Source of the DNA: Heterodontus francisci
Lineage: Eukaryota
NCBI RefSeq assembly: GCF_036365525.1
Contig: NC_090393.1
Span: 54,700,488-54,764,487, forward strand
Direction of reading: 5' to 3'
Length of the DNA stretch: 64,000 nucleotides
This document shows positions 2,831 through 51,379 of this stretch, one piece after another; the first letter of the stretch is position 1, and each line of letters begins with the position of its first letter. The translations under genes were made by a program, and so were the position numbers. The notes below the pieces were generated by a model. That model saw nothing but the letters and a program-made list of their open reading frames with translations. It was not told the DNA's origin and did no database searches.

Positions 2831-2959
2831 ATGTTTGCGAACAAAACTCACTATCGTGCATGCAGTCTCAAGTCTTCGCCCTCCATTACGGCTATCTCTC
2901 CAGCATGACTCGCACCCTGAATATCCATATGTGTCAAGATGTCTTTATAACATGTTTGT

Positions 2960-8799: not shown

Positions 8800-9640
8800 A
8801 CACAGTACGTGTGTGGCAGGGAGCAAGAAATTACATAGTTAGACGAAGTGAATTGAGAAAACATTGACAGACGGAGTTCTATGCCAGAAAGTGTGACCTG
8901 AGAACAACAGAGAAGAATATTTTCTTAATACTGAGAAATTTGGATCCAGAGGAAGCAAAGGGATTTTCGGTGAGTATGTGCACAAATCATTAAAAGTTAA
9001 TGCACAGGTGCAAAAAGTAACCGAAAAGGTAAATGGGATGTTGATAATTTTTCCAAAGGAGAATGGAATTTAAAAGTGAGGAAGTAATGCTTCAGTTATA
9101 CACAGCCTTTGGCAGACTCCATCTGGAGTATTGCACCCGGAAGCTCAGTAAATATATGTTGGCCTTAAAAGGGATGCGGGGCAGATTCATCAATTCATTT
9201 GGCCTTTAAAGCATTAAGATGAGGATAGGTTGCATAAACGTGTCTTGTATTCCTTGAAATTAAGAAGATTGAAGGGTAATCTAATCTAATTATTTAAATG
9301 AATACAAAATTCGATAGGATCAATACAGAAAAACTATTTCTCTCACAGGGAATCCAAAAATTGAGGACATAATCTTACAGCTTTTTAATTTAAGAGTGAT
9401 GTCAAGAAGCACTTTTTCACCCAAATTTCATTGTTAATTTGAACCTTATTATATCGAAAGGCTGAGGATGCTGGGTCATTTGGAACTTCTAAGACTGAGT
9501 TGGAGTGGTTTTTTTTAGGTAAGTGTATCAAAGGATATGGAACAAATTTGTGTAAATGGAGTTGAGGTACAGATCATCTTTGATCTTATTGAATGCTGGA
9601 ACAGACTGGACTGGCTGATTTACCTATTTATTTTGATATG
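8800..9640 (+). mobile_element. Old CR1 3' fragment; copy at ~39205-40045
   Basis: Degenerate RT C-terminus (LQLYTAFGRLHLEYC) and CR1-like 3' UTR. Confidence 0.7.
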
Positions 9641-9649
9641 CTTCGAGTG

Positions 9650-11570: not shown

Positions 11571-11606
11571 CCCATTATGTTAACTGCCACTCCCACCTCA
11601 CCACTA

Positions 11607-12497
11607 TGTTACGACCACAGCAGGAGCAACACATTGTCAATTCAGTCCCCTCACTCCACAGGTCGCAGCATACTATTAAGCTTTCACACCCAATTGGAAA
11701 ACAGCCAAATTAAACACTCTAGTAACCCAAGAATGAAACAGACCAAACTAGGTATCTTTAGAGAACAATAAATTAACTATTTATTAAAACTAAATCTTAA
11801 ACACTATAAAGATATAATTATGTCCAAAGACCTTATAACTTCTTATTTTAATCTAAGTGCCCCATGCAAGCACATACATTCAAAAACTAACAGTTAATCA
11901 GTTTTATAAGTGGTGTTTTAAAAATTACCTGTCTCTTAAGAATAAATAAAATAAGTAAGTTTTTGCAGGTTATGTTGCTGATGGATGAGGTCTTCTAATG
12001 TGAAAATAGTTAAAGGCCACTCGAAGTCTTCATCTGGATTTGATGAAAATAGTCGTTCAGTCGATAGGTATTCAACTCTTCAGCTGCAGCAAGCATTAAA
12101 CAGTTCTTTGAATGATAAGCACAGCAATACAAACGGTTTCTTCCAAAAGAAGGCTTTTTCTTCTTTACTCAGGGAATTAACTTGGTTGGTAGCTCCTTGT
12201 CGAATTTTTGGCTGAGAGGGAAAGTACAGTTTTCTCTCTTCAGTACGCTTCACTGGAAAATCTCTCAACACTGACTGGTGTCAGCTGGTTTCTGCCAGTT
12301 CCACACACAGTCAAAGTGGAAGCATCATACCATGTGAACTCTCTCTCCTGCTGTTGCCCAGGGTAAAATAATGCACCTGTGGCACACTGTGTCCCCAGAC
12401 CTTTCTCTCCCTTAAAGGTACACTGTTTTTAACAGAGTCTTAAAAGTCCACACACTGTTTTTAATCCAAGGAGAAAAATAGTTACACGTCTGTGACA
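11607..12497 (-). mobile_element. Solo LTR (~890 bp); copy at 42012-42902
   Basis: TGTTAC...GTGACA termini, flanks acta/actg (4-bp TSD with one mismatch), no coding content. Confidence 0.7.
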
Positions 12498-12499
12498 AC

Positions 12500-15170
12500 T
12501 GGAATTCAGCAGTTTAGTCCGTGTTTGGACCAAGGCTGTAATTAGTTCCAGAGCCAATTGAGTGCCAGTGAGCAGGTTATTGCCAAGTACATACCACTTG
12601 ACAGCACTGCTGACAACACCTTCCAGCAGGTTGCTGATGATTGAGAATAGACTGATAGGGTGGTAATTAACCAGGCTGATTTGCCCAGCGTTTGGTGGAC
12701 AGGACATACCTGGGCAATTGGTAGATGCCAGTGTTGTGTCTGTACTGGAACAGCTTGGCTGGAGGTGCAACTAGTTCTGGGGTGCAAGCCTTAAGTACTA
12801 CAGCAGGGATGTTGTTGCGGCCCATAGCCATTGTGGTATCCAGTGCCTTTAGCCATTTCTTGGTAGCAAATGGAATGAATCAAAATTGGCTGAAGTCTGC
12901 CATCTTTTTATTTTATTCATTTCATGAGGTGTGTCACTGGCAAGGTCAGCATTTTTTGCCCATCCCTAATTGCCCTTGAGAAAGTGGTGGCAAGCTGCCT
13001 TCTTGAACTGCTGCAGTCCATCTGGTGGGGACAATCACACAGTGCTATTACGGATGGAGTTCCAGGATTTTGGTTCATTGAAAGTGAAGGAACAGCGATA
13101 TATTTCCAAGTTAGGAAGGAGTGCGGCTTAGAGGGATGCTTACAGGATGGTGATGTTCCCACATGTCTGCTGCCCTTGTACTTCTAGGTGGAAGAGGTCG
13201 CATGTTTGGAAGGTTCTATCGATGGAGGCATGGTGAGTTGCTGCAGTGCATTTAGTAAATGGTACATCGTGCTGCCACTGTGCGCTGGCGGTTGAGGGAG
13301 TGAATGTTTAAGATGGTGGATGGGGTGTAAATCAAGCGTGCTGTTTTTTCCTGGATGCTGTCGTGCTTCCTGAGTATCGTTGGAACCGCACTCATCCACG
13401 CAAGTGAAGAGTATACCATCACACTCCTGAATTGTGTTTCGTAGATGGTGGACAATCTTTGGGAAGTCAGGAGGTGGGTTACTCACCACAGAAGTCCGAG
13501 CCTCTGACCTACTCTTGCAGCCACAGTATTTATGTGGCTGCTCCAGTTCCGTTTCAGGTCAATTGTAACACTGAGGATGCTGATAGCAGGGGATTTTGTG
13601 ATGGCAATGCCGTTCAAAGTCAAGGGGAGATCACTGAATTTTGTCTTGTTGGAGATTATCAATGCCTGGCACTTCTGTGGTGCAGATGTTACTTACCACT
13701 TATCAGCCAAAGCCTGAATGTTGTCCAGGTCTTGCTGCATAAGGACATGGACTGCATCACTATCTCTGATGGTAGTGGCCTCAGGAGGAGGCTGAGATGG
13801 ATCAGCACTTCAGGCTGAAGGTTGTTGCAGTGCTTCAGCCCTGTCTTTGGCACTCTCACGCTGGGTTCTTCCTCCCTTGAGGATTGGAATAGACATGAAG
13901 AATCCTCCTCCCATTAGTTGTCAACTTTGTTTCCCACCATTCGTGACTGGATTGGGCAGGACTACGGATTTTGATCTGATCCATTGATTGTGGGGTTGCT
14001 TAATTCTGTCGATAGCATACTGCTTCCGTTGTTTAGCATGCACGTAGTCCTGTGTTTCAGTTTTACCAGTCATACAGCTCACTTTTAAGTTTGCCTGGCG
14101 TTACTCATGGCATGCTGTCCACCACTGCTAACTGAACCAGGATTTAGAGCATGGGAACCCAACCCCAACCCGACCAGAACCGATGACGTGTCAGCTTTGG
14201 GTCGGGTCTCTCTTCCTGGTCCGGCATTGGGGTTCAGGTCGGGTCGGGCTGGGTAGGACACAGTGCTGCCTTTTGCTTAAGGAGGGAAAAGCTTCAAAAT
14301 TTGAACGGCCAGGACGTCAAGGCAAGAAATGTGCATCCGGGCTCGGCACTAGTCTGCAGTGCATGATTCCATTCAAGGTAGAGCACAACCTCTTTGATAT
14401 AATCAACTTCATTCCAGTAGTCGTGCCAGGCGAGTTGGGTCGGGTCGGGCGCAGGAACAAATCAAAGGACTCAGGATGGGTCGGATTCGGGGTCGGATGT
14501 GGTTCTCTCGTTCCAGGGTTGGGTTTCAATTGCATACCTGAGCAGGCCTTTACCAGGGTTAGCCGCGTCGCGTGATGGTGATAGTAGAGTGTGGCCATGA
14601 GATTACAGATTGTGCTTGAATATAATTCTGCTGCTTTTGATGTCTCACAGTGCTTCAAGGATGTCCCATTTTCAGCTTCGAGATCTGTTCTGCTCTAACC
14701 CATTTTGTATGGTGCTACTGTCATGGAACATGATGGAGGGTTTCATCAGTGTGAAGGCAGGACTTTGTCTTCACAAGGGCTGTGCAGTGGTGACTCCTAA
14801 CAACACTGTCATAGACAGATGCATCTGCAACAGAGAGGCTGACGAGGACTGGCTCAGGTCGATTTTCCAACATGATGGGTCTCTCACTACCTGCTTCAGA
14901 CCCAGTATGGCAGCTTCGTCAGTAGTGGTGCTACTGAGCCACTTTTGGTGCTGGACATTTAAATCCCTCACCCAGATTATATTCTGAGCACTTGCTACTA
15001 TCAGTGCTTCTTCAAGTGGTGTTCAACATAGAGGAGGACTTATTTATCAGCCGAGGGAGGGCCGTAGGTGATAATCAGCCATAAGAATTTATGGAGCCAA
15101 AATTATTTTAAGGATTCCCAGGTTCAGTCCCTCCCAACCATATACCACTGCGCCTTCACCTCTGGTGAGT
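12500..15170 (-). mobile_element. Fragmented, rearranged non-LTR retrotransposon remnants (clade uncertain); copy at ~42905-45575
   Basis: NYHPISLFSIISKLLEGVV, SVMVYSSLAWMSAVPT...IQEKTARLI, APE-like DLNVQHQKWL. Confidence 0.7.
14145..14552. mobile_element. Non-autonomous hAT-like element with ACCCG/CGGGT subterminal repeats; copy at 44549-44956
   Basis: 8-bp flanks ccaggatt / ccagggtt; TA..TA ends; many (t)cgggt / acccga motifs. Confidence 0.55.
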
Positions 15171-15592
15171 CTGGACAGAGTTTTATGTTGGGCGGGAGGT
15201 CCCGCCCACCGGCCAAACCTTCGGGGATGAGCCCACCTCTGCCGGGCCTGGAGACCCACGCCAGGCTTTTACACTCCCCAGCCTATTACTTGCCGCTGCT
15301 ACCCCTCATAAAATTGTAGTGCCTATTTAAGACAGAGATGAGGAGAAAGGTTTTCTCTCAGAGGGTCGTAAGTCTTTGGAACTCTCATCGTGCAAAGTCA
15401 GTGGAAGAGGTACTTAGAATCTTGATGAACAAGAGGGTGAAAGGTTATTGGCGGTAGGCAGGAATGGGGTGTTGAGGTTACATTCAGATCAGCCATGATC
15501 TTGTTGAATGGCGGAGGAGGCACGAGGGGCCGGGTGGTCTACTCCAGCACTTAATTCATATGTTCGGATGTCATCCCTGTGTCATATGTTAC

Positions 15593-15612
15593 AGCACCAG
15601 CAGGTGGCAATG
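15593..15612 (+). promoter_or_regulatory. CTCF-like motif, also containing E-box CAGGTG; copy at 46005-46024
   Basis: agcaCCAGCAGGTGGCAatg matches the CTCF core CCASYAGRKGGCR. Confidence 0.6.
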
Positions 15613-16059
15613 TTGCACTACATTTATTTGGTGCACAAATGTCAATGGCATCTCAGACATTTCTTATGAGTAAAAATAAGAACATTTTGTGATTAATTAT
15701 ATCACATTTTATCAAAATATTACAACTTAAAGATATTTGTCTCTCAATTAGCCACAATTATTTACATCAAACCTTTGATACTTCCGAAATTGTCTTTAAC
15801 ATTTCCCGTTGCTTGGTTTCGGCTTGCAAAATGCTAACAATATAAGTGACTCCTTGCAACTCAGAGCAAGCACAGAGCGATCGCGGATGTCATCAATCTG
15901 TGCGGACGTTTGCCAGCTTGCCAGTATGAATGCGCGGTTGCCTTGTCAGCAAACTCAGCCCATCTAAACCTGTGGTTCTCAAACAGAGCTCCCCAGACCC
16001 GTGGGGTCCGCAGTGACCTTCTGTGCTGTCCGCGTGCGGGACAACCTTATAGTTGGACG

Positions 16060-16643
16060 AAAACAAGAAATGCTGGATTCACTCAGCAGGTCTGGCAGCA
16101 TCTGTGGAAAGAGAAGCAGAGTTAACGTTTCGGGTCAGTGACCCTTCTTCGGAACTGACAAATATTAGAAAAGTCACAGATTATAAACAAGTGAGGTGGG
16201 GGTTGGGCAAGAGATAACAAAGGAGAAGGTGCAGATTGGACCAGGCCACATAGCTGACCAAAAGGTCACGGAGCAAAGGCAAACAATATGTTAATGGTGT
16301 GTTGAAAGACAAAGCATTAGTACAGATTAGGTGTGAATATACTGAATATTGAACATCAGCAAGTGCAAACCTGAAGAAAAACAACCTGAAAAAAACAGTG
16401 GGTAAGCAAACTGAACAAACTAAGATGAAATGAAATAAATGCAAAAAAAGATTGTAAAAAATGTAAAAAGGAATGCAAAAAAAAGGAATAAAAAATAACT
16501 AAAAATGACTGAAAAAGAAAGTAAAGTGGGGGGCTGTCATGCTCTGAAATTATTGAACTCAATGTTCAGTCCGGCAGGCTGTAGTGTGCCTAATCGGTAG
16601 ATGAGATGCTGTTCCTCGAGCTTGCGTTGATGTATAGTTGATG
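16060..16643 (-). mobile_element. 5'-truncated PLE, copy-1 specific
   Basis: 12-bp TSD tatagttggacg (16048-16059, 16644-16655); empty site at 46460-46471; encodes the endonuclease tail RKLEEQHLIYRLGTLQPAGLN. Confidence 0.9.
16120..16156 (-). ncRNA. Hammerhead-like motif in a PLE end (others at 9882-9917, 40287-40322, 59019-59055, 60173-60209 minus; 60976-61012 plus)
   Basis: Reverse complement AGTT-CCGAAGA-A-GGGTCACTGACCC-GAAACGTT-AACT. Confidence 0.7.
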
Positions 16644-17104
16644 TATAGTTGGACGGCTGTCCAGGGCTCCGTAACCAAGAGTATGCAAGTGAACGGCGAT
16701 CGCAGCCGTGCTCTGCTCCATCGTGCTCCTCCAGTGTTTTTTTCCGTGATCTGCTTCCCCCGTGATGCGATTCCCGCCATTGTACTGCTCTCTCCGGGTT
16801 GCTGCCAAGAATAGACAGACTATGCAGTGAGAAGCAGGCACTCCCATCACAGTGTTATCTATAAGTAAATACCGGTCTTCTCAAAACCGTTCTTAAAACA
16901 ATCTTTACATGCAGCACTTTCATATTTTGAGCTTTATATAGCATTATAATTGGGCCGGGATGGGGGGCATGATTACTAATCTATTAATCCGTTAAAAGGA
17001 GTCCTTTAGTGAAAAAGATTTGAGAACCACTGGACCAGAGAAACTGGGGCTTCTCTCAGAGTGGAGCACGTTAAAGAGAGATTTGATCGAGATGTTCTTC
17101 AAGC

Positions 17105-19790
17105 AACAGAAAAGCAAATAATGCGAATGCTACAAATCTGAAACAGAAACAGAAAATGCTGGAAATACTCAGCAGGTCTGCCAGCATCTGTGGAGAGAGG
17201 AACAGAGTTAACTTTTCATGTCGATGACCCTTCATGAGAACTGGGAAACGTTGTAAATGTAAAAGATTTAAAGTAGTATAAATATAGGAGGATGGAAATA
17301 GAACAAAATGGAACGTCTGTGATAGGGTGGAAGTTGGGAGACATTGAATGACAAAGGAGTTGGTGGGGCAGAGTGAAAGGGAGTAGTAATGGGACAAGTA
17401 AAGAAAAAAAATGTCTCCAGAGGAGGTGTGAATGGCAGCATAATGAACAGCTACAATCCAAAAGCAAAAACAAGAGAAAAAGTGTGAAAAACAAGACAGC
17501 AGTCGAAACATGCAAAGGAAAGGTATTAAAATGGGGGCAGAGATTAGAGTCTGGAATTGTTGAACTCAGTATTGAGTCCAGAAGGCTGTAGAGTGACTAA
17601 TCAAGAGATGAGCTTCATCGGAACACTGCAGCAGGCCGAGGACAGAGATGCCAGCGTGAGAGCATGATGGAGAATGAAAGCTGCAGTCCACTGGAAGCCT
17701 GGGGTCATGCTTGTGGCTGACCAGAGGTATTCCACAAATTGTTCACCCAATCTGCATTTATTCTCCTTAATGTAGAGCAGATTGCGTTGTGAGCAGCATA
17801 AACGGCGGATAGGTTACTAGGCTGTTTCCCCTCGAAGGAGTGTTTGAGGCCTAGGACAGTGAGGCGAGATGAGGCAAGGGGACAGTTCCTGTATCTCCTG
17901 TGCTTGCATGGAAGGGGACAGGGTGTTGGGTGTGAGAGAGGAGTGGAGCAGGGTGTCACGGAGGGAATGTTCCCTCCAGAATGCTGAATGGGGAGGGGAG
18001 CAAAAATGTGTTTGATGGTGGCATCAAGTTGGATGGGGCAGAAATAGTGGAGGATGATCCATTGAATGTGGAAGCTGGTGGGGTAGAAGGTGAGGACAAG
18101 GGGAAACCTATTGTGGCTCTGGGAGGGATGGAAAGGTTTGACAGCCGAAGTGTGCGATATGGGTCAGACATGGTTGAGGGCACTGTCAGCCACGTTGGGG
18201 GGCGGGGAGATGCGGGGGATAGAATCCTTGGTTGAGGAAGAAGGGAAACATATCCGAAGTACTGGTGTGGAAGGTTGCATCATCAGAATAGAGATGGAGA
18301 AACTGGGAGAATGGAATGTAGTCCATACAGAAAGTAATTTGTGACTGTGTAGTTGAGGCAGCTGAGCCAGTCAGTGGGCTTATTATGACTATTTGTTTAT
18401 AACCCATCACTATAAATGAAGACAAAGAGGCACAGGAAGAGAAGCGGAGTTGGAGATTGCTCATGAGAAGGTGAGAGAAGGGCAGAAATTGGAATCAAAG
18501 TTGATAAACATTTCCAGTTCAGAGCGAGAGCAGGGAATGACACTGATACATTCATCAATGTACTGGAAATAGAGTTGAGGGAAGGGGAACAATGAATCTT
18601 CCACATTTTCCACAAAAAGGCGGGTATAGCTAGGACCTAGGTGGGTAGCCATAGCAACACCTTTTATCTGGAGGAAGTGAGATGAGTTAAAGAATAATTT
18701 ATTCAATGAGAGAACAAGTTCCAACAGGCAGAAGTGTATGGTGGTGGATGGAAACTGGTTGCACCTCCATTCAAAGAAGATGTGGAGAGCCCTCAAACCA
18801 TCCTGGTGGGGGATGGAGGTGTGGAGAGATTGGACGTCCATGGTGATGAGAAGTTGGTTATGGCCGGGAAACTGGAAACAGTTGAAGTGACAGTGGGCAT
18901 CACAAGAGTCACGGATGTAGGTAGGAAAGACTGGACAAGGGGAGAACAAAATAGATTCGAGAGGAAGAAATCAGTTCAGTCGGGCAGGAACAGGTTGAAG
19001 CAATAAGTCTCTTTGGGTAGTCCTGTGTGTGGATCTTGGGAAGCAGGTGGACGTGGGCTGTAAGGCGTTGGGGAACTATGAGGTTCTAAGCTGTGGAGGG
19101 ATGATCTCCAGTCGTGGAAATAATGGTTTGGTGTTTGGTGCTGTGGTTATTCTTCAGGGAGAGGTAGGAGGAAGTGTCAGAGAGTTGATGTTCAGCATCT
19201 GATAGGTAAAGATCAGTTTGTCAGACAACAACAGCACCATTCTTGTCAGCAGTTTTGATATGATGTTAGGGTTGGACCTGGGAGAACAGAATGCAGTCAG
19301 TTCAGGGGGAGATAGGTGACAGTGAGTGTGGGGAGCAGAGAAATTGAGACGGTCAATGTCACATTGCATTTCTCAATGTAAAGATCAAGAGAGGTAAGAG
19401 GCAGGGGAGGAGGGGGTGGGGGGTAGCGGTGGGTGCGAGGTGGAGAGAGAATATTGGAAATGGGTAAACTGGTTTGATGTGTGAAGGGAGGACTCCTGGC
19501 CAAAGAAGTCGGCGCAGAGGCAAAGACAATGGAAAAAGAGCTCAACATCGTGCCGAGATCAAAATTCTTTGAGATAGGCCGTAAGGGAATAAAGCTGAAT
19601 CCTTTACGAAGAACCGATTGTTCAGGGTCAAGGTGGGGAATGTGGGAAGTTATTGTGAATACACGGCAAGAGGTGAGATTAGAAGAAGGGATGTAGTCAG
19701 AAGGAAGTGAAGGGGAGAAAGATCTGGAAGGGTATTGGTACCCATGAGCTGTCTGAGCTTGCGATCGTCAACAACTGACATGAAGATAAA
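17105..19790 (-). mobile_element. Long decayed PLE inserted in a CR1 3' fragment; copy at ~46921-49610
   Basis: PLE RT motifs LITMDVQSLHTSIPHQDGLRAL, FLQIKGVAMATHLGPSY, YIDE, IPFSQFL; terminal repeat related to the short PLE copies; CR1 sequence on both sides (17040-17100, 19795-20140). Confidence 0.85.
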
Positions 19791-20594
19791 AAGTTCTTGA
19801 AGGAATTTGATAGAGTAAATAAGCAGCACGTCTTTCCAGTGGCAGAGTTTCGACAACCAGAGGTCACAGATTTAAGGTAATTTGGGAAAAGAACAGAAGG
19901 GCAAGGAGGAAAACAAAGTCACGCCAGTTGTTTTGATCTGGAATACATCAGCTGAAATGTTGGTGGGAGAAGATTTAATAATAACTTTCGAAAGGGAATT
20001 TGATAATCACTTGAAGTTGGGAAATATAGAGGGTTCTGGAGAAAGACGAGGGCATTGGATCTAATTTGATGGCTGCTTCACAGAGCCTACATAGGCGCTA
20101 TGGGCCGATTGGCCTCCTTTGGTGCTGTTTTATTCCATGAATCTCTGTACTATCTGAGACACTATCTGCAACCACGACGGCCTGTGCTCTCAGTGTACTG
20201 ATTGAATCGTTATTTCTTGCTCTCTCTGTGCCTTTCAGTTGGACAATGAGAATGGAATTTCGCACAACAGTGACATCGCACAGATGATTTCACTTTGCCG
20301 TTTTTCATAACTATCACAAGTCTAATGAACAACTGTTATATTTGACTCATTTACCCTTAATTTTTCAATTCATTGACATGACATTCTAAACCTCACCGTT
20401 TCCTGTGACACAAATATCTTGCCCGGAACCATTAATAAAACATCTTGCGGAAAGCACCATTTCCTCGTCCACATTTTTCTCACAAAGTTTAACTCACCAA
20501 GACTTCCCAAGAAGTGCACTATTGTCACCTCATTGCAGGGCAAGATGAAAATAAAACATTTCGATGTGTTTGTTAAACCTTCATTCATTTCCAT

Positions 20595-20622
20595 GATCGA
20601 TCGATCGATCGATCTATCTATC
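20595..20622. repeat. (GATC)5(TATC)2 microsatellite upstream of the promoter; copy at ~50416-50443
   Basis: Read directly from the sequence. Confidence 0.9.
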
Positions 20623-20871
20623 CCTGATGTCAATAGGGACAGTGCCCAATTTCTTTAATTCCTTGCTGCAAACAAATCAAATCTCAACTCATACTTTGCT
20701 TATCCAATGCGCTCTTCCCGAGGTCCATAGAGCTATTAAAGCATTTACTATGCTCAATCATTCTCCAGTTGTGTCCGATCTCATTGACGTTTTGTTTCTC
20801 TTTTTCTAAAATGACTGACATGCGCGTAATTCAAATATCAGTCAACACAGGGCATGGGAGCCCGTGACCTG

Positions 20872-20940
20872 ATTTACATGAATGGAAATTTGCATGTAAA
20901 TTTAATATTCAATGACGTTGCGAAGGTTGAAACTTTTTAA
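20872..20940 (+). promoter_or_regulatory. Ig light-chain promoter, cluster 1
   Basis: ATTTGCAT (light-chain orientation) at 20888-20895, 131 bp upstream of the ATG; variant octamers ATTTACAT 20872-20879 and ATGTAAAT 20894-20901; CRE-like TGACGT 20913-20918; TATA-like TTTTTAA 20934-20940. Confidence 0.85.
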
Positions 20941-21018
20941 GGAGAGGTTTAGAAAGAGCCCAGAACCACATTCGTGTCAGGAACTATTCTCCATCTGACC
21001 CTCACTAGAACCTTCACC

Positions 21019-21067
21019 ATGACTGAATGGGTTCAGGTTCTTGCCGCACTGATGCTCTGTCTCCACA
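21019..21067 (+). CDS. IGL: Ig light chain (lambda/type II) cluster 1, leader exon
   Basis: caccATG context, MTEWVQVLAALMLCLH hydrophobic signal peptide, phase-1 donor A|gtaagt at 21068. Confidence 0.93.
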
Positions 21068-21208
21068 GTAAGTACAGGCGTTAACCTTCATTATCGCTGC
21101 TGTTTGCATTGCTCGGAATTTTTTTGTGCTTGTGTTTAACAGACCTGAATTAGCAACAATATTCACAATTGCAGAGTTTGACTCATCAATAACTTGTTAT
21201 TTCACCAG

Positions 21209-21556
21209 GCACAAACGCGGATGCTGTCCTGACTCAGCCAGGATCCATCTCCACCTCCCCGGGGAGCACCGTCAAGATCACCTGCACCATGTCCGGAGGC
21301 AACATCGGCAGCTACTACACGAGCTGGTACTGGCAGAAACCCAGCAGTGCCCCTGTATTGGTTTGGAGCTCGGACAGCGGTCAAGCTTCGGGGATTCCAG
21401 ATCGATTTACCGGGTCTGTGGAGTCATCGAGTAACCAGTTACTTTTAACCATCACCAATGTGCAGTCGGAGGACGCCCCCGATTATTACTGTGCTGCCAG
21501 GAGTAGCAGTGCAGTTGCATATATTTTCGGGAGAGGAACCAAGCTGAACCTGGACA
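21209..21556 (+). CDS. IGL: Ig light chain cluster 1, fused VJ exon
   Basis: Acceptor ttcaccag|; (S)TNADAVLTQPGSISTSPGSTVKITC...WYWQKP...GIPDRFTGS...EDAPDYYC-AARSSSAVAYI-FGRGTKLNLD; V runs into the J motif FGxG with no RSS; donor A|gtaagt at 21557. Confidence 0.97.
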
Positions 21557-21925
21557 GTAAGTAAATTATTTCTACTGAGCGTTAACATTTTCAGCGTTAA
21601 CATCGAAATATCAAAAATCACTTTAAAATCACTGGCTTGGTAGATTGGATGAGAGCAAAACAGGACTATTTCTCTTAGAATACAGAGCTTGTGAATCAGC
21701 GTCCGGTGACATTTAAAAGATAGGCATAACTGCGCCCAATTTTACGCAGGGTTTTCAGGTTGGAAGAGAGGACAGAGGCAATTTTTTTAAGATGATACCA
21801 GTGCTGCAAGGTTTTAGTTACAAGAGAACGAGAGTGAAGCTCGGTCTACTGGAAGTTTACGGGATCATCTGCTAGAAATGAGCATAGTTCTGAGCAAAAT
21901 GAAAACAGATATTTTCACTGATGTG

Positions 21926-22036
21926 TGACATCACACCTCAATATCAGAACCAATTGTCGAGGCTCGGCCTCTCATTTTAGTATTGAAAAAAGTAGTGTTT
22001 CAACCCTTTCTTCATTTCTTCACATTACATAAACCA
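21926..22036 (+). repeat. 111-bp direct repeat A in the J-C intron; copy at 51748-51858
   Basis: tgacatcacacctcaa...cacattacataaacca recurs at 23430-23540. Confidence 0.92.
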
Positions 22037-23429
22037 GTCGGTAGCCTGAGGACATCAATTCAATGTCCTTGGTAGAAGGACGAAGGGACTGGATAGGATA
22101 TTTTCTTTACCCAGTGGAGTGTTAGGACTGCAGTGTCCTATCTCAAAGAATGGGGCGAGCAGAATCAGACTATCGTTTAAAAAGAAAGTGGATAAAACTT
22201 TGACAAAGGAAAAACAAATGGATGGGAATAGGACTAAGTGGGCGCCTTTCAAAGGGTGCGATTGGCCTGTTTCTGGCGATGATTCTATGAATCCCACAGG
22301 GTCTTTGAGACCGGAATACCGCGGCCCTTTTCGGCTCAAAAGTCATAAACACAAACTCAAAACTTTCATTCTACTGGGAGTGGTACCGGAATTTAATCAT
22401 CATTCTTGGATTGAGACTGCGGGAGGATAGTGTGGCGACTTGCTGTAAATCTCTCTCATTCGTCTCCAAACTCAGTGAAAACCGCTCAGGACATGATTCT
22501 CAGTCCGACATTTCGCATGAATCCCCGCTGACTATAGTAATCACACTGATGAGCTAAGTTCAGCTGGTGATAACCATTCACACTGATCGATTTTCTGCAT
22601 TCCGCAATAACAAACACCAATAATTGACATGATGCCTATTTTCTTAACAAGTCAGGGGCTTGTGTAGCAATGTCTCGGAATCGGTATCAGATTCTTCCTG
22701 CTGCTCTTGTGCTTTCAATTGCGCTTTGCTGTCGGTTCTGTGGTTAGGGCGAGAGGAGTAAAATGGAAAATGCACATACTCTATCGCTATTTTGACTTGG
22801 TTATTCGGTGGCATCACAGCAAAATGGGCTAAAATGAGATATAAAACAGAACATGCGACAGAATATTTTCAATTATTCCTTTTCAAAACGATCGCTGCTA
22901 CTAACTTTCTCGTTCGTTATTTACTTGCTTACTCTCCTAAAGGTCCAGAGGCTTCTCTCCCCATTAGAGAGACAGTTGGTGATACATAGTTTGAGGATCA
23001 CCACTCCTCAAGTTTGGGACAAGCCTCCATGAGCTAACACAGCCGGTAAAGGGATTGAGCCCACGCTGTTGGGGTCTTTCTGTCTCATATTCTAGCCGTC
23101 CACCCAGCTGACGCTCAGTTCGCTGCAAAACTCTTGTATTTAGACAATAATATAAACTGATGGTAAAACCTACTCAATAATCCCACGAGATTTCAGATAT
23201 TTCAGTATCTGAATTTTCAGCTAAACTCTGGGTGAGGCCTGGAGATTATACAAACTCTGACAACAGGGGTTGGAGGCACTTGTCAGACGAATCGCAGTTT
23301 CAGTCTCCAAATTAATAACGTTAGGAAAGTGAGGCGAAGTGTCGGTTCCAAGGCGAAACTCTCTGAATGGCAATAGATTGTTAAACCGTCACCGTCACAT
23401 CGAGTGCTGGTGAGACGCGCCGATGTAGC

Positions 23430-23540
23430 TGACGTCACACCTCAACATCAGAACCAATTGTAGAGGCTCGGCCTCTCATTTTAGTATTGAAAAAAGTAGT
23501 GTTTCAACCTTTTCTTCATTTCTTCACATTACATAAACCA
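23430..23540 (+). repeat. 111-bp direct repeat B in the J-C intron; copy at 53253-53364
   Basis: About 4 mismatches to repeat A. Confidence 0.92.
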
Positions 23541-24631
23541 TTTTACTGAGGTTTGTCATTGGCAGCTGGTGCTTGTAATACATGGTGCGAAGGGTTATTT
23601 AAAAGATATGAGATTCTGAGAGTTCGGCTTTAATCTTCTTACACTTGGTAATATTTCGTTGTTGCCTTCATGGGAATATTTCGATTGAAGAATAAGAAAA
23701 AAAAAGAACGAGCTTGCATTGTTAGGCCTCCTTCCACGACCTCAGGACATCTGAGCGCACTTCATAGCTAATTTCGTGCTTTTTAAAGGACAGTCACCCT
23801 TTGTAATGTATGAAACTCGGCAGCTTATTTGCGCAAAGTCCCACAAACATCACAGGCCAGATAATCTGTTGTAACGATGTTAGTTGAGGGATGAATATAA
23901 ACCAGGTCAGGTTGGCTTTATTACTTGCAGATTGAGGTTATATTATTAGACAATATAGATATAATAGTTCACAATAACAGATGTTATTTAGAGGAAACAG
24001 TTTCCGTTTAGTGAAAACGTATGAATTGTGACACACTGACCCCAAAGAAGTCCCCAAACAGCGTAATTAGAATGTGATAGAACAGTCTTCTGAGGTTTTA
24101 GGCAAAAGAGTCGGACGAGCGGGAAACCTTGTGGCAGCGAGAAAGGAGCAAAGCGACAGAAATCCAAATATTAGTCCAAGATTCACTTCCGTCAAAGCAA
24201 GTGCAAATTCGAAATTATTTAATAGTTGGTTTAACAATTTGGCCTTAAACGTTTGGCCTTAAATATTGAACAATCTTTGCTGTCAGCATTGCCGTCAATA
24301 TTCTCTAATATGCCCTAATTCTGATTTATTGATTATTACGATTCTTTTTCATCTTTGTCTTATTGTCTGAGCGCATTATTTTGCTTAGATTCAAATTTCT
24401 CTTAAGAATTTGTATGCGTTTCTTGCCTGAAGGAAAAGTAGGAATCTTTTCTCAGGTTATATATTCCCCGGGACTGTTGCCCTAGCCATTGGACTCTAAC
24501 GGGATTCCGTTCTATTAAACTCATTATAGCTATTTAATGTAATTTTAAAAGTTTTCAAAAATGTCAAACATTGATTCCGACTTTTATGTGGATGAAAAAT
24601 GGATCTACTTAAATTTGTTTCTGATTTTCAG

Positions 24632-24954
24632 ATCCACGGGTCCCCTCGGTTTCGGTCCTTCCGCCTTCATCAGATCAAATCGCAGCAAAGAACACGGCGA
24701 CCCTGGTGTGTTTGGTGAGCGGTTTTAACCCGGGAGCTGTGGAGATTGAGTGGACTGTAGATGACAGTGTGAGAGGGAATGGTGTTGAGACCAGTCGGAT
24801 CCAGCAGGAGACGGACAACACGTTCAGTGTGAGCAGTTATCTGACTCTGCCAGCCTCAGAGTGGAACTCACACGAGCTTTTCTCCTGTGTGGTTAAACAC
24901 GAGACTCAGGCAAATCCGCTAAAAACAAGTATCTCGAGGTCCAGTTGTATCTGA
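24632..24954 (+). CDS. IGL: Ig light chain cluster 1, C exon
   Basis: Acceptor ttttcag|, phase 1; (N)PRVPSVSVLPPSSDQIAAKNTATLVCLVSGFNPG...W...FSVSSYLTL...FSCVVKHE...SRSSCI*; C1-set cysteines plus penultimate Cys for the heavy-light bond. Confidence 0.97.
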
Positions 24955-25167
24955 TTCAAAATCTTATGTATTGATTTGTTATTCCAGCAGCAAAGTTTCT
25001 TTACAAATATATTCCGCAAACGGCCATTACATGCTTGCTTTTAAGTGGAACATTTCAAATCAGAACAGTGGTGCAGTTTATCCGGTGGATTCCGCTGTCT
25101 GTTTTTTACAGTGTGTTCACCCTGAACTGATCAAAGTTTCAGTGTAACCTTACAAACATCACAGTTT

Positions 25168-25173
25168 AATAAA
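25168..25173 (+). terminator. PolyA signal, cluster 1
   Basis: AATAAA 214 bp after the stop, followed by GT/T-rich tgtgttgttattttt; conserved in copy 2. Confidence 0.8.
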
Positions 25174-25799
25174 ACGACTATTCCGCTATCTCATGTGTTG
25201 TTATTTTTCTGTGCCGTTGGGTCTGAAACAATTGTTAGCAACTTCCTACATGTGATTAAATAGCGGTTTTATTTTTGCAACATTCTGCACATTTTGTGTA
25301 AAGCCTTTGACATCAGTCAAAATAATCAGATTATGTACACGAAGACGTGGAAGTAATCTGGCAACATATTTTCAAAGATAGACCTGGCTGAATTTCGTTC
25401 GTGTCGGGATGGAGCTGAACCATTTGTCAGTGTTTCTGACACGAATTCAAAGCACTTGGTGCAAGTGTTTCTAAATCATCTGGTTACACAAATTCAGGGC
25501 AAACCCCGTGACCGCCTCTCTTTTGGAGACCCCGCACTTAACGCGCGGTGCAATTCCTGACACTGCATTCTTTTTTCAAAATTATCCGATGACTTTAATT
25601 GGTCAATAATGGTTAGATTGAATCAGGTTATTTTAGAAGCAAGTCATAACTAGAGATTCCTTGAGGCCTTTGACCGAAACCAGCTCATATAACAGTCGCG
25701 CTTTTTAAATTCAGCCTCACACAAATCACCAACTCGGTGCAGTATCCCTTTAGTATCAAGCCTTCTTTGTTCAGACTGATGTAGGTCTACGGTACATAA

Positions 25800-29800: not shown

Positions 29801-32800
29801 GTAAAGTCAAGTCAGTCATTGCGACTTCTGATACATTGCTTGTCTATCGATAAATCTAGTTTGCCGCTCATCCGTGCTTTGCTAAATCAATGAATAGGAG
29901 GAAAATATTATCCAAATGGGAGTTATGGCAGCTTGACCTTTGGGAAATCGATCTCTTGTGAAGCTCACTGGCTAAATATGTCACACAGTGAGCTGGATTT
30001 TACATTCAGTTTGAAGGCGGGTTCTTTGGCGTGGTTGGCCGGAGAATCAACGCAGATTCAGCTACCAAGGAACCTGATGCCTAATGCCAGATTCTGATTT
30101 CCTAGGAGGCGCCGAAATTCCATGGTGGCACTGCCGCCGCTCTGTGATGAGACTGTAATTTAAATATGTTAAATACAATTTTGCATTAATTATCATTAAA
30201 TTCACTGCAATCCTAACAGCTGTTTGCAATCTTCTGCATGACAGGTGGCACCCACGTGCTTTCACTTTCCTCTCTTGAAAAGCTGGCAACACCGAAGTGT
30301 GAATCCTTGGTGCTTGCAAAGGTTTGGTAAATTATGCGTTGTTCGCCTGTTGAACTTGTTTTAACTTCGGACATTACCACTAAGGTCAAGCTGCAAATAT
30401 AATTGACATAATAGCCGAACAGCTGTAATTAGTAGAAAATGATGATGATAAAACAGATGTAGGGCAATATGATGAACAACAAGGTAGGAGGTCCGAGAGT
30501 GATGCAGTGATATCGGCTAGGATTCAGTTAGAAACAAAAAAAACTTGAGGCAGAAAAAGTATTAAGAAATCTTGAATTGGAAAAAGAGGAAAGGGAAAAA
30601 GATAAAAACAATAGCATTAAGAAAACTTGAACTTCAGAGAGAGAGAGAGTGAAAGAGAAGACAGGCAATTTAAATTAAAAGAAATGGAACTATGACAAAA
30701 GAGTAGTCTTGAATCCAGGGAAAATTCAGGTCAGGAAGAGTCTGAGTTTAGATCAGGACTCAGTGAGAAGTTGTTCAGGTTTATATAGGCTCTTCCTAAG
30801 TTCGAGGAAAGGGATGTAGAGGCATTTTTCATATCTTTTGAAAAAATAGCTAAACAGATGAAATGACCGAAAGAAAGCTGGACATTGCTCATGCACGCAG
30901 GCTGGTAGGTAGAGCTCATGAAGCTTATGCCATGCTTTCTGAAGAGGCTTCTGCAGATTATTAAATGGCAAAAAAGGCTATTCTCACTGCGTATGGGTTA
31001 GTCCCTGAAGCTTACTGTCAGAAGTTTAGGAACTTACAGAGAATGACTAGGCAGACATATTAAGAATTTGAGAGGGTGAAGCAAATTAATTTTGACCGTT
31101 AGATATGGGCATTAAAGATAGAAACCACATATGAGGACCTTCGAGAATTGATTCTCTTAGAAGTGTTTAAAAACTCCATTCCTTCAGTAGTGAGATCTCA
31201 TGTAGATAACCTGAAACTTTTGAAAGCTAGGCAAGCAGCAGAGATTGCTGATGATTCTGATCTTGTGAATAAGCCAACCTATTTTGTCCGTCACCACCAT
31301 AAACCCGAGAAGGATAGAAAGTGGAAGAGTAAAAGGAAGGCAAGTAGCCGGGCACAAGAAGGAACAGCTGAGAATGCCCCAGCATCACCTTCTCAGGTCA
31401 GAAAGGAACGTGCTGGGGTAGAAGTGAGGTTCACAACTCAAGATGTTATCATTGCAACAACAGGGGTCATCTTCATTCAGAGAGCTGGAAATTGCGAGGT
31501 AAACGCATAGGACTTGTTGGGGTAAGCAAAGTTAGTGCAGAGGAAAGACTCCCTGACTGAGAGTACAGAAGACCAGGCTATAGCTTTAACGACAGCTGTG
31601 AATGTGAAGCCAGAACTAAAACTAAGAGGATTGTAGAGGTTAAGAATAAAATAGCTGAGAGTTGTAATGATTTTTTGACAAAGGGGGAGTAACTCTGTAT
31701 CCTGTAAGTGAGGCAGGAAATCCTCAGGGATACAGGAGCGACCCAAACACTCTTGCTGGAGAAAGATATGAAGTTTTCACCAGACAGCATCTTGAATGCT
31801 GAGGTTTTAGTAAATGCAATTGGCGGGGTGTGTATACCCATACCTTTGCATAGAGAGTGACTTAATAACTGGGATAGTAACAGTAGGTGTTGTTCAGAGT
31901 TTACTAGTAAAGGGAATTGATCGACTCCTAGGAAATGATTTGGCTGGATCAAAAATATCAGTTTTTCCTATAGTTACAGAGGAACCATGTGAAGTTAAGG
32001 AAATGGAGCAATTACAGGAGCACATTCCAGGAATATTTCCTGCGTTACGAGCAATGGCTAAACAGGATCCATTGTTGGAGTTAAAAGGGACACCACAAAT
32101 AGATAATCAGGCATCTGAAACCTTATTTGGGGATTTAGATAATCCAAATCAGATGTTTAACAGATTGTCTATCATTGCAGCACAGCAAGCTGATCCAGAG
32201 ATCTACCAAATAGTATAGACAGCTCTGTCAGAAGCCGAGGTGAAAGGAGTTCTGGAAGGCTATTATATGGCAAATTGGGTTTTGTGGAGGAAATGGAGAC
32301 CGCCTCACAGACATGCTGACAAAGACTGGACAGTTGTTGAACAGATAATGTACCACCTAATGTACCAATCGCCAAGGATTATTAAGGTTAGCACACGACA
32401 TTCCCTTTTCAGGACATAGGGGAATTCAGAAGAACAAATCATACATAAGCAAACATTATTACTGGCCAGGTCTTACAAAGGTGTCAGACAATTTTGTAGA
32501 AAATGCCACACCTCTCAAACGGTGGGAAAACGACACCTACAATTGAAAGTGTTCGCAAGTTGTTAATTGTTGAAATCCGTCATGGAAGAAGGAAAGCACC
32601 ACCTGCTGCTGGAGTTAGACTATGGACTGTTCTACTGTGGAAGAACCTTTTTTTTTGCATCGGACGGCTGGGAGGACTTCAAGCAACATTGGACTGTAAA
32701 TTTGCAAGGACTCTATTTTTTTCTAGTTTAAATGTTGTTTCTATTTTCATAATGTTTAAGAATTTAATTCTTCTTATTAAAGAGTTAATTTAAAAGCACC

Positions 32801-35800: not shown

Positions 35801-36514
35801 CTTGTCTAGTAGGGCCATCCACATACTGATTCAGAAAACTATCCTGGACACACTTAACAAATTGTTCCCCATCTGATCCCTTTGCACTAAGGCAGTCCCA
35901 GTCAATATTAGGGAAGTTAAAATCACCTATGAATACAACCCTATAATCCCTATACCTATCTGTGATTTCCCTACATATATGCTCCTCCACTTCCCTCTGA
36001 CTATTGGGGGGCCTATAGTATAATCCCATCAAAGTGCTCACCCCTTTCTTATTTCTAAGTTCTACCCATGTGGCCTCGCTGGGCATTACTCCCGGGATAT
36101 CCTCTCTAAGTACTGCCGTGATGTCCTCCTGAATCAATAGTGCAATTCACCCTCCTCTCTTACCTCTAGCTCTGTCACACCGGAAGGATCAGTACTCCAG
36201 AACATTGAGCTGCCAGTCCTGCCCATCCCTCAAACACGTTTCCATAACTGCTATAATATCACCATCCCATGTGCTGATCCATGCTCTGAGTTCATCTGCC
36301 TTACCTGTAAGGCATTAAAATAAATGGAGTTTAGCCGATCAGACTTTCCACGCTCCCTGTATTGCCCCTGCCACGCCTGCCTACTGGACTTGCTTGCTTT
36401 AACCTCAACATTTGCCTCAACTAACTCATCGGAGAGACTACTACTTGTCCCGAGCCCCTGCAAGACTAGTTTAAACCCTCCCAAGTAATACTAGCAAACC
36501 TCCCCGCAAGGGAA

Positions 36515-36605
36515 GGTTAACTCTGATATTAAACATTGTGGTTACACTGATATTAAACACTGTGGTTACTCTGATATTAAACATTGTGGTTACTCTGATA
36601 TTAAA
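36515..36605 (+). repeat. Same 24-bp minisatellite, ~4 units
   Basis: Inter-copy offset drops by 96 bp (4 units) here. Confidence 0.97.
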
Positions 36606-51031: not shown

Positions 51032-51379
51032 GCACAAACGCGGATGCTGTCCTGACTCAGCCAGGATCCATCTCCACCTCCCCGGGGAGCACCGTCAAGA
51101 TCACCTGCACCATGTCCGGAGGCAGCATCGGCAGCTACTACACGAGCTGGTACTGGCAGAAACCCAGCAGTGCCCCTGTATTGGTTTGGAGCCAGTTGGG
51201 CGGTAAAGCTTCGGGGATTCCAGATCGATTTACCGGGTCTGTGGAGTCATCGAGTAACAAGTTGCTTTTAACCATCACCAATGTGCAGTCGGAGGACGCC
51301 GCCGATTATTACTGTGCTGCCCTGCTTGGCAGTACAGCTGCATTTATTTTCGGGAGAGGAACCATGCTGAACCTGGACA
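51032..51379 (+). CDS. IGL: Ig light chain cluster 2, fused VJ exon
   Basis: 348 nt, same length as cluster 1; ...EDAADYYC-AALLGSTAAFI-FGRGTMLNLD; intact AG/GT splice sites; no RSS. Confidence 0.97.

What the first reader, a model, noticed from the sequence alone, without database searches (positions are those of the whole stretch)
21370..21522. Paralog differences are contiguous multi-base substitutions like shark somatic hypermutation
Seen: CDR2 TCGGACA vs CAGTTGG (runs of 2 and 4 adjacent changes); CDR3 AGGAGTA vs CTGCTTG (two doublets and a single). Some single changes lie in RGYW motifs (AGCA/AACA in CDR1, AGCT/AGTT in CDR3). Established: shark Ig somatic hypermutation yields tandem substitutions, and germline-joined genes are attributed to RAG activity in germ cells. 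Inference (speculative): AID-type mutation, or short gene-conversion tracts from other clusters, may also write into these genes in the germline. Accumulated selected point changes are the conservative alternative.
Basis: partly seen in the sequence, partly recalled or inferred. Interest (0 to 1): 0.8.

Follow-up and report, generated by a model that had tools for sequence, protein, structure and literature searches.

The report
Shark antibody gene copies differ in binding loops
Two neighbouring ready-joined antibody light-chain genes of the horn shark differ mostly by short multi-letter blocks in their antigen-binding loops, and this looks like ordinary selection for diversity plus patch-swapping between gene copies, not antibody hypermutation acting in the germline.

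Summary
Copy A (VJ exon 21209-21556) and copy B (51032-51379) are germline-joined lambda (type II) light-chain genes in a ~29.8 kb tandem repeat. They read TCGGACA/CAGTTGG in CDR2 and AGGAGTA/CTGCTTG in CDR3.

- **Where the differences lie:** 16 of 20 exon differences fall in the 93 CDR bases (p=4e-7).
- **Tandem runs:** more frequent than in the flanks (4 of 14 events vs 9 of 251, p=0.003). Once CDR crowding is allowed for, adjacency is not significant (P=0.10).
- **AID-type signature:** not seen. There is no WRCY/RGYW or DGYW/WRCH excess and no transition bias. Divergence in the leader intron and the 5' J-C intron is not raised (0.7-3.0% vs ~2% background).
- **Other horn-shark lambda genes:**
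  - A third CDR2 type, SEYSGKAS, also found in other sharks, lies between A and B. The 6-of-7 run is therefore the sum of changes on two lineages.
  - Each CDR3 version recurs in another gene alongside a different CDR2 and framework. This incompatible mosaic points to patch exchange.

CDR-biased replacement among joined light-chain clusters has been in print since 1995. An earlier follow-up in this scan reached the same CDR3-swap reading on neighbouring DNA. Verdict: a known kind, low to moderate interest.

The parts
20888..20895 (+). Octamer ATTTGCAT 131 bases upstream of the start codon of copy A (copy B: 50709-50716, same relative place)
   Evidence: 3 matches in the window, 2 of them at the same relative place in the two copies. 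The count alone is not above chance (mean 4.63 in shuffles). The role of the motif in Ig promoters is recalled, not tested.
21019..21067 (+). Leader exon of copy A (MTEWVQVLAALMLCLH...); copy B 50840-50888
   Evidence: RNA contigs join 21067 to 21209 with GT..AG ends. The sequence matches the N-terminus of P0112.
21068..21208 (+). Leader intron, 141 bases; 1 substitution (0.71%) and a 2-base T-run difference between A and B
   Evidence: Depth is zero in the three RNA-like runs.
21209..21556 (+). Germline-joined VJ exon of copy A, with V and J in one open frame and no recombination signal between them; copy B 51032-51379
   Evidence: Pfam V-set E=9e-15. The translation lies exactly within P0112 = XP_067911421, and copy B's within P0111 = XP_067911423. 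The J motif FGRGTKLNLD is contiguous with V. No consensus RSS is found in the window.
21286..21324 (+). CDR1 (TMSGGNIGSYYTS); 1 difference, at 21302 (AAC in A, AGC in B and in most other transcripts)
   Evidence: Boundaries follow Kabat-style landmarks that I recalled.
21370..21390 (+). CDR2: SDSGQAS in A, QLGGKAS in B. Seven differences, including the runs at 21370-71 and 21373-76
   Evidence: The third type GAG TAC AGC .. AAA is dominant in the RNA contigs and corresponds to SEYSGKAS of P0054 and P0113.
21493..21525 (+). CDR3: AARSSSAVAYI in A, AALLGSTAAFI in B. Eight differences, including doublets at 21499-500 and 21502-03
   Evidence: B's loop is identical in P0054 and A's type is in P0113. 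Both copies can form a 10-bp hairpin here.
21557..24631 (+). J-C intron. A/B divergence is 1.3-3.0% except for a sharply bounded patch at 24237-24560 with 16.4% divergence plus indels
24632..24954 (+). Constant-region exon of copy A including the stop codon (copy B 54477-54799). Five A/B differences: 4 silent and 1 F/Y
   Evidence: Pfam C1-set E=1e-25. RNA contigs run on from 21556 into the first letters of this exon (loose ends). Coordinates and differences.
51193..51199 (+). Copy B CDR2 run CAGTTGG
   Evidence: Confirmed in a DNA contig of the same animal (X1, record 7).
51322..51328 (+). Copy B CDR3 run CTGCTTG
   Evidence: Seen as a loose end of a DNA contig in X1 at 21498.

Best explanation
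The stretch is the CDR2-to-CDR3 part of the VJ exon of one member (XP_067911421) of a head-to-tail array of germline-joined lambda (type II) light-chain clusters of the horn shark. It is compared with its downstream neighbour (XP_067911423).

The multi-base differences come from ordinary germline evolution of such an array. (a) Diversifying selection keeps replacement changes in the binding loops, while frameworks, introns and the C exon drift at the background rate. (b) The A/B comparison adds up changes on two lineages from an older CDR2 (SEYSGKAS; GAG TAC AGC). Copy A took GA>TC and T>G; copy B took G>C and ACA>TGG. (c) The CDR3 block is an old two-state cassette moved between clusters by gene conversion or unequal crossing-over, so it is not a fresh mutation in A or B.

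The few true multi-base steps that remain are best read as ordinary multinucleotide mutations or successive selected hits. The flanks also carry multinucleotide events, at about 4% of events. No antibody-type hypermutation in germ cells is needed.

Shown here: the clustering in CDRs, the replacement bias, the mosaic at protein level, the intermediate CDR2, and the background-level introns. Inferred: the direction of change, and conversion as the mechanism.
For: - **Family and state:** V-set and C1-set domains. The nearest proteins are shark lambda chains, and the exact match is to annotated Heterodontus francisci genes. The gene family is transcribed and spliced.
- **Selection:** 16 of 20 exon differences lie in CDRs (p=4e-7), all in replaced codons. 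The C exon has 4 silent changes and 1 replacement. Frameworks stand at 4 of 255 bases, against a 2.2% background.
- **No raised mutation supply:** leader intron 0.71%; J-C intron 2.0%, 3.0% and 1.7%; upstream 1.67%.
- **Intermediate CDR2:** the RNA contigs' dominant letters G, A, T at 21370, 21371 and 21373 give GAG TAC AGC, which is SEYSGKAS of P0054 and P0113. E stands at CDR2 position 2 in 25 of 36 shark lambda chains scored, and SEYSGKPS occurs in a catshark.
- **Mosaic:** columns 22, 33 and 101 group P0054+P0113 against A+B. Columns 115, 116, 117, 119 and 122 group P0054+B against P0113+A. The two sets do not interleave along the gene.
- **Patchy history of the repeat unit:** 0.53% divergence over the first 16 kb, 2.2% over the gene part, and a 324-base patch at 16.4%.
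- **In print:** CDR-biased, replacement-rich differences among joined clusters (abstract of PMC2192082).
Against: - Tandem events are still more frequent in the exon than in the flanks (4 of 14 vs 9 of 251).
- After polarising, a doublet, a triplet and two doublets remain with no single-step germline intermediates among the annotated genes.
- Three to four fixed changes within 9 bases on each of two lineages, where flanks differ by about 1% per lineage, need very strong selection, single multi-base events, or CDR patches much older than their flanks. I could not tell these apart.
- The mosaic rests on protein sequences only. DNA of the other clusters was not obtainable, so tract ends and identity at silent sites are unknown.
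- The order of genes in the array is taken from earlier notes, not from my own calls.
- The E-type codons come from RNA contigs that may include somatic variants.
Confidence: 0.6

Rival explanations
1. Germline hypermutation: AID and the shark-type error-prone repair act on these transcribed, pre-joined genes in germ cells and write tandem substitutions that are then inherited.
For: Runs of 2 and 4 adjacent changes match the 2-4 base size range reported for shark somatic tandem mutations (PMC5931798 passages; PMC4279169 passage). Tandem events are enriched over the flanks (p=0.003). Two single changes lie at RGYW/WRCY bases (21302, 21515). RAG acts in shark germ cells according to PMC2193156 (passages).
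Against: There is no hotspot excess (4 of 20 vs 44 of 348; 6 of 20 vs 62 of 348). There is no transition bias (6:10). Leader intron and 5' J-C intron divergence are at background, although hypermutation is not confined to CDRs. Frameworks are at background. The CDR3 block is shared with other genes, so it is not new in A or B. Adjacency is not significant given CDR crowding (P=0.10). Expression of AID in gonad was not tested.
Confidence: 0.07
2. Short-tract gene conversion also made the CDR2 patches. Donors are diverged V sequences (pseudogenes, other lambda subfamilies) whose frameworks match, so only the loop letters change.
For: Exchange between clusters is indicated for CDR3. The sharply bounded 16% patch at 24237-24560 shows that foreign tracts can sit inside near-identical flanks. 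The 50 or more bases on either side of CDR2 are identical. Many further CDR2 types exist in the same animal's DNA and RNA contigs (loose ends).
Against: None of the 9 annotated horn-shark lambda proteins, nor the cDNA, carries SSDSGQ or SQLGGK other than A and B themselves. No word of 11 or more bases from either CDR2 occurs elsewhere in the window. The one DNA contig laid on CDR2 is B-type only. The search was limited to annotated proteins and one 64 kb window.
Confidence: 0.15
3. Template switching at a local quasi-palindrome, or a relic of a long palindromic addition at the original germline joint, produced the CDR3 cluster.
For: Both copies can fold a 10-bp stem across FR3/CDR3, with z = -2.2 and -2.6, and 4 and 3 of 200 shuffles folding as well. 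In copy B two of the changes (21505, 21511) improve the stem; this is my reading. The two CDR3 doublets are reverse complements of each other, against 0 of 13 flank doublets (p=0.025, post hoc).
Against: The stems are weak, include G-T pairs, and were not found by the repeat finder at seed 6. The loop letters are not an inversion of each other. The tests were chosen after seeing the data. This reading does not explain CDR2.
Confidence: 0.05
4. Assembly or haplotype artefact: the two copies are mis-joined alleles or chimeric reads.
For: DNA contigs of run X1 laid on CDR2 show only the B-type letters. X1 to X4 hold only about two thirds of the sampled words.
Against: Copy A's private letters are present in RNA contigs of the same animal; for example the reference C at 21478 makes up about 1.5-6% of depth. 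In X1 only part of the CDR3 depth is B-type (8.9 of 15.3-24.3), so other letters, possibly copy A's, are there too. The two copies sit 29.8 kb apart in one window with different insertions. Both are annotated as separate genes. The tool itself warns that a hole proves nothing.
Confidence: 0.02

Closest known systems
Germline-joined lambda (type II, NS3) light-chain clusters of cartilaginous fishes
   Same: L, VJ and C layout, with V and J fused in one exon and no RSS. There are multiple clusters. The closest proteins are sandbar-shark lambda chains (75% over the V exon). [quoted passage not shown]
   Different: Nothing essential. This is the horn-shark array, with about 30 kb between clusters and 97-99% identity between the two neighbours.
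Skate type I joined light-chain clusters (Anderson et al. 1995, PMC2192082)
   Same: Differences between joined germline genes lie preferentially in CDRs, and replacements exceed neutral changes (abstract). The same holds here.
   Different: Different isotype and species. I saw only the abstract, so I do not know whether the paper discusses multi-base runs or cassette sharing.
Shark somatic hypermutation with tandem (contiguous) substitutions (Lee et al. 2002, cited; the paper itself was not seen)
   Same: Runs of 2-4 adjacent changed bases in V regions, many of them replacements in CDRs.
   Different: Here the changes are inherited differences between paralogues. They lack hotspot targeting and transition bias, spare the introns and frameworks, and are partly shared as blocks with other genes.
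Concerted evolution and gene conversion in tandem V-gene or MHC-type families, with selection for diversity
   Same: Near-identical flanks, islands of difference at ligand-binding codons, incompatible combinations of islands between copies, and patchy divergence along the repeat.
   Different: Conversion is inferred from protein mosaics only. No tract was mapped at DNA level.

Membership tests
Germline-joined lambda (type II) Ig light-chain cluster | V-set domain and J motif (FGxGT) contiguous in one exon, with no recombination signal between them | tested here: met
   No consensus heptamer-spacer-nonamer in the window (exact consensus only, so a degenerate signal would be missed).
Germline-joined lambda (type II) Ig light-chain cluster | Split leader and a single C1-set constant exon downstream, spliced to J | tested here: met
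   (C1-set, 1e-25). (joint 21067>21209; loose ends behind 21556 read the first letters of the C exon)..
Germline-joined lambda (type II) Ig light-chain cluster | Closest relatives are cartilaginous-fish lambda chains | tested here: met
   Exact identity of the V translations to XP_067911421 and XP_067911423.
Shark-type (AID-dependent) hypermutation signature | Tandem substitutions of 2-4 bases | tested here: inconclusive
   4 of 14 exon events vs 9 of 251 in flanks (p=0.0027). But P=0.10 once crowding in the CDRs is allowed for.
Shark-type (AID-dependent) hypermutation signature | Targeting of WRCY/RGYW (DGYW/WRCH) hotspot bases | tested here: not met
   4 of 20 vs 44 of 348 (within CDRs p=0.74). 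6 of 20 vs 62 of 348 (p=0.14).
Shark-type (AID-dependent) hypermutation signature | Bias toward transitions | tested here: not met
   CDR ts:tv is 6:10 against 129:132 in flanks (p=0.44). The bias itself is as stated in PMC5931798.
Shark-type (AID-dependent) hypermutation signature | Mutation spreads over the transcribed V region including frameworks and flanking introns, not CDRs alone | tested here: not met
   Leader intron 0.71%, first 500 bases of the J-C intron 2.0%, frameworks 4 of 255, background 1.7-2.3%. That hypermutation reaches the introns is recalled. PMC5931798 reports framework mutation at about half the CDR rate.
Shark-type (AID-dependent) hypermutation signature | AID active in the cells concerned (here germ cells) | not tested
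No gonad run was examined.
Gene conversion / patch exchange between tandem paralogues | Incompatible site patterns that fall in separate contiguous blocks | tested here: met
   3 sites (columns 22, 33, 101) against 5 sites (columns 115-122), not interleaved. Protein level only.
Gene conversion / patch exchange between tandem paralogues | A donor carrying the identical tract at DNA level, with mappable tract ends | not testable with these tools
Only identity of the amino-acid loops is shown.
Diversifying selection on CDRs | Replacement changes exceed silent ones in CDRs while frameworks and the C exon do not | tested here: met
   CDRs: 16 changed bases in 11 codons, all replaced. VJ-exon frameworks: 3 replacements and 1 silent change, plus 1 silent change in the leader exon. 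C exon: 4 silent and 1 replacement. No formal codon model was run.

The most novel reading that the evidence does not exclude
A mutational process that makes short multi-base replacements acts preferentially on the loops of pre-joined antibody genes in the shark germline. It could be shark-type error-prone repair, or a template-switch process flipping dinucleotides to their reverse complement (AG to CT twice, and GA to TC once polarised). The surviving doublets and triplet would then be single inherited events of the same kind as somatic tandem mutations.
Probability: 0.08. Interest if true: 0.8.

Novelty: new member of a known kind. Interest (0 to 1): 0.3.

Why it matters
If antibody-type hypermutation wrote into inherited genes, it would blur the line between somatic and germline diversification and bear on how pre-joined shark genes acquire their loops. 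The evidence here points the other way. The array behaves like other tandem immune gene families: loops are kept different by selection and shuffled between copies, while the rest of each unit stays nearly identical. What is useful is concrete. This is a clean four-gene example (two CDR3 types, three CDR2 types, two framework types) in a chromosome-level assembly. It is suited to measuring conversion tract lengths and the share of multinucleotide mutations fixed under diversifying selection.

Tried and rejected
- **Donor search in the window.** The only word of 12 bases shared with a CDR is at 61747, in unrelated sequence. Words of 10-11 bases at 63036 and 63182 lie in what I take for a transposon-like stretch, on reading its translation by eye; no tool was run. 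I rejected all of these as chance.
- **Inverted-repeat finder on CDR3.** Nothing at seed 6. Folding gives only weak stems.
- **V-exon protein search.** It found no horn-shark protein because full-length chains exceed the length range. Solved by querying with database proteins P0001 and P0112.
- **Soma-to-germline retro-transfer of mutated mRNA (search listing only).** Rejected because both copies keep the leader intron and the J-C intron.
- **Independent germline joining as the source of the CDR3 difference.** Rejected for A and B. The loops have the same length, the J side is the same, and the block lies just after Cys-Ala-Ala, on the V side.
- **DNA depth in X1 as a copy-number clue.** Rejected because depth is a per-contig mean and the tool warns against that use.
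- **RNA contigs with T at 21374 or G at 21376 in excess of the full B-type letters.** These could be single-step intermediates, but they may be somatic variants, so I did not count them.
- **Papers.**
  - PMC47676 (sandbar shark genomic lambda clone) is not held.
  - For PMC2192082 and PMC2191167 only the abstract and reference list are held.
  - Lee et al. 2002 (Immunity) was not seen and is cited only through other papers.
  - Supplementary files were not asked for.
  - Searches for earlier proposals of germline hypermutation in shark joined genes listed none. I did not read all the listed papers.

Full report
**What is there.** The window holds two head-to-tail copies of a unit of about 29.8 kb. 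Positions 1-16059 match 30502-46471 at 98.8% identity. Positions 16644-25385 match 46460-55230 at 96.7%, and further downstream the match falls to about 86%.

Each unit carries one light-chain gene. In copy A the parts are:
- an octamer at 20888;
- a leader exon at 21019-21067;
- a 141-base leader intron;
- a VJ exon at 21209-21556, in which V and J are already fused in frame;
- a 3.1 kb intron;
- a constant exon at 24632-24954.

Pfam gives V-set (9e-15) and C1-set (1e-25). No consensus recombination signal is present in the window. The closest proteins to the V exon are sandbar-shark lambda chains at 75% identity.

The V translations of copies A and B are contained exactly in XP_067911421 (P0112) and XP_067911423 (P0111), which are annotated in Heterodontus francisci on an 83.7 Mb contig. 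Reviews state that lambda (type II) genes are germline-joined in all cartilaginous fishes studied, and that joined genes arose through RAG action in germ cells (passages of PMC5192425, PMC4279169 and PMC2193156).

I made no spliced model. The exons were scanned apart against Pfam, and only the V exon was searched for relatives. The joined step was left out. Full-length queries were database proteins.

**Expression.** I laid the contigs of three RNA-like runs and one DNA run, all from one animal, on 20950-21650. The RNA-like runs cover the exons and not the intron. They join 21067 to 21209 at GT..AG, and they run on from 21556 into the first letters of the C exon. The family is therefore transcribed and spliced.

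Contigs laid numbered 2831, 2529 and 128 in the three RNA-like runs, which reflects many paralogues and probably somatic variants. Contigs cannot separate the two.

**Check of the observation.** The quoted letters are correct. A and B differ at 20 of 348 exon bases (5.75%).

| Region | A/B divergence |
|---|---|
| Upstream | 1.67% |
| Leader intron | 0.71% |
| VJ exon | 5.75% |
| J-C intron, first 500 bases | 2.0% |
| J-C intron, next 500 bases | 3.0% |
| J-C intron, next 1000 bases | 1.7% |
| C exon | 1.5% |

- Sixteen of the 20 differences lie in the 93 CDR bases (p=4e-7).
- All 16 fall in replaced codons.
- The C exon shows 4 silent changes and 1 replacement.

Tandem events are 4 of 14 in the exon. 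In the flanks they are 9 of 251 (p=0.0027), or 16 of 293 if the divergent patch is kept (p=0.0087). However, if the same numbers of changes are dealt at random within CDR2 and CDR3, 3.7 adjacent pairs are expected against 6 seen (P=0.10). The adjacency is therefore largely a by-product of crowding into a few codons.

**Tests of the AID reading.** None of four expected features is seen.
- **Hotspots.** WRCY/RGYW bases carry 4 of 20 differences, against 44 of 348 bases (within CDRs p=0.74). DGYW/WRCH bases carry 6 of 20, against 62 of 348 (p=0.14).
- **Transitions.** They do not dominate: 6:10 in the CDRs against 129:132 in the flanks. Shark hypermutation is described as transition-biased and hotspot-targeted (PMC5931798).
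- **Non-coding spread.** A mutator acting on the transcription unit should raise divergence in the leader intron and the 5' J-C intron, where nothing selects against change. It does not.
- **Frameworks.** They sit at background, 4 of 255.

**Other paralogues.** Querying with database proteins returned 9 annotated horn-shark lambda proteins and one cDNA.

*CDR2.* Two of the genes (P0054, P0113) have CDR2 SEYSGKAS. The letters dominant in the RNA contigs at 21370, 21371, 21373 and 21382 give GAG TAC AGC GGT AAA for this type. It agrees with B at 21371 and 21373 and with A at 21374-76, so it lies between the two.

E at the second CDR2 position is found in 25 of 36 shark lambda chains scored. SEYSGKPS occurs in a catshark, and SEYSGTAS and SEYGGMAS in other carcharhiniform sharks. 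This type is therefore very likely ancestral. On that reading:
- copy A changed GA>TC, T>G and A>C (Lys to Gln at 21382);
- copy B changed G>C and ACA>TGG.

The 6-of-7 block is the sum of two lineages. A doublet and a triplet remain.

*CDR3.* Copy B's loop AALLGSTAAFI is identical in P0054. Copy A's type is in P0113 with one difference, Val/Ala. Framework columns 22, 33 and 101, and the shared CDR2, group P0054 with P0113. A and B share the other framework states. CDR3 columns 115, 116, 117, 119 and 122 group P0054 with B, and P0113 with A.

These two partitions are incompatible, and each occupies its own stretch of the gene. That is the expected trace of gene conversion or unequal crossing-over, and it is unlikely to arise by convergence at five residues. 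Other species carry xLSS at the same CDR3 positions (Heptranchias, Mustelus). Each horn-shark type shares a part of that motif.

*Copy A's private changes.* By the letters that most transcripts carry, copy A has about nine private changes in its V exon. Three are in FR3, including an Ala-to-Pro in the conserved DAADYYC stretch.

**Patchy history of the unit.**
- Divergence is 0.53% over the first 16 kb and 2.2% over the gene part.
- A sharply bounded 324-base patch in the J-C intron (24237-24560) reaches 16.4%, with indels, between flanks at about 1.3-1.5%.
- Different parts of the unit therefore have different ages. This fits repeated exchange within the array.

**What remains open.**
- *How the remaining multi-base steps arose.* Three to four fixed changes in 9 bases on each lineage, beside flanks that differ by about 1% per lineage, need one of the following:
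  - very strong selection;
  - single multi-base events, which the flanks also carry, at 3.6% of events;
  - unsampled donors;
  - loop patches older than their homogenised flanks.
  
  CDR2 is flanked by more than 50 identical bases on each side. This argues for short events or loop-limited selection.
- *A post hoc oddity.* Both CDR3 doublets are reverse complements of each other (AG/CT), against 0 of 13 flank doublets (p=0.025). Copy A's polarised GA>TC is a third such case.
- *A weak hairpin.* Both copies can fold a weak 10-bp hairpin across FR3/CDR3 (z = -2.2 and -2.6).

I give these a small probability of marking a templated process.

**Limits.**
The mosaic therefore rests on proteins.
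- Gene order in the array comes from earlier notes of this scan, not from my calls.
- The DNA run's contigs at CDR2 show only the B-type letters. The tool states that a hole proves nothing.
- Gonad expression of AID and RAG was not examined.
- Of the key papers, I saw passages of PMC5192425, PMC4279169, PMC5931798 and PMC2193156, and the abstract only of PMC2192082. Lee et al. 2002 I did not see. Supplements were not consulted.

**Relation to earlier work.**
- The abstract of PMC2192082 (1995) already reports that differences among joined skate light-chain genes lie preferentially in CDRs, with replacements in excess.
- Within this scan, a follow-up on DNA 38 kb before this window (s1-872528) concluded that neighbouring horn-shark lambda genes swap CDR3 patches. 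I reached the same reading from my own protein alignment before seeing it, so the two are not fully independent evidence.
- Other notes describe the array of ~28-29 kb cassettes (s1-872566) and the same tandem-dinucleotide idea on the upstream cluster (s1-872595).

**Verdict.** The AID reading is not supported. The conversion reading is supported for CDR3 at protein level. The conservative reading, selection on ordinary mutations, covers the rest. This is a new member of a known kind, and I score interest at 0.3.

Noticed in passing
window 24237-24560 (copy B 54067-54405): A sharply bounded patch in the J-C intron just upstream of the C exon is 16.4% diverged, with several indels, between flanks that differ by about 1.3-1.5%. 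It looks like a tract of different origin inside the repeat unit.
   Followed up: partly
window 1-16059 vs 16644-25385: The two halves of the repeat unit differ fourfold in A/B divergence (0.53% vs 2.2%). The step coincides with an element of about 585 bases at 16060-16643. Copy B lacks it at this place, and related copies of it occur elsewhere in the window (for example 55333-55912, inverted, 97.6%).
   Followed up: partly
window 21488-21515 and 51312-51337: Both copies can form a 10-bp hairpin between the end of FR3 (codons for Tyr-Cys-Ala-Ala) and the middle of CDR3 (z = -2.2 and -2.6). It could be chance or a relic of a palindromic addition at the original germline joint.
   Followed up: partly
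window 21499-21503 and 21370-21371: The CDR3 doublets AG/CT are reverse complements of each other. Copy A's GA>TC (polarised through the GAG type) is a third such flip. None of 13 flank doublets is one (p=0.025, post hoc).
   Followed up: partly
window 21436, 21441, 21478, 21302: By the letters most transcripts carry, copy A has private changes outside CDR2 and CDR3. They include Ala-to-Pro in the conserved DAADYYC stretch. Its private letters are still present in RNA contigs at a few percent of depth, so copy A may be a fast-evolving or weakly expressed member.
   Followed up: partly
window 62975-63966, 3081-4083 and 33582-34584: Repeats about 70% alike. A stretch around 63060-63230 read to me like the reverse transcriptase of a LINE-type retrotransposon; no tool was run on it.
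   Followed up: no
Read laying on window 21366 (loose ends): Further CDR2 types in the same animal are too diverged to align. One is in DNA and RNA contigs and fits P0082 (RDYDSTRGS); one is in RNA and fits P0055 (SESYDTAS). This shows a wider expressed lambda repertoire than the two genes here.
   Followed up: partly
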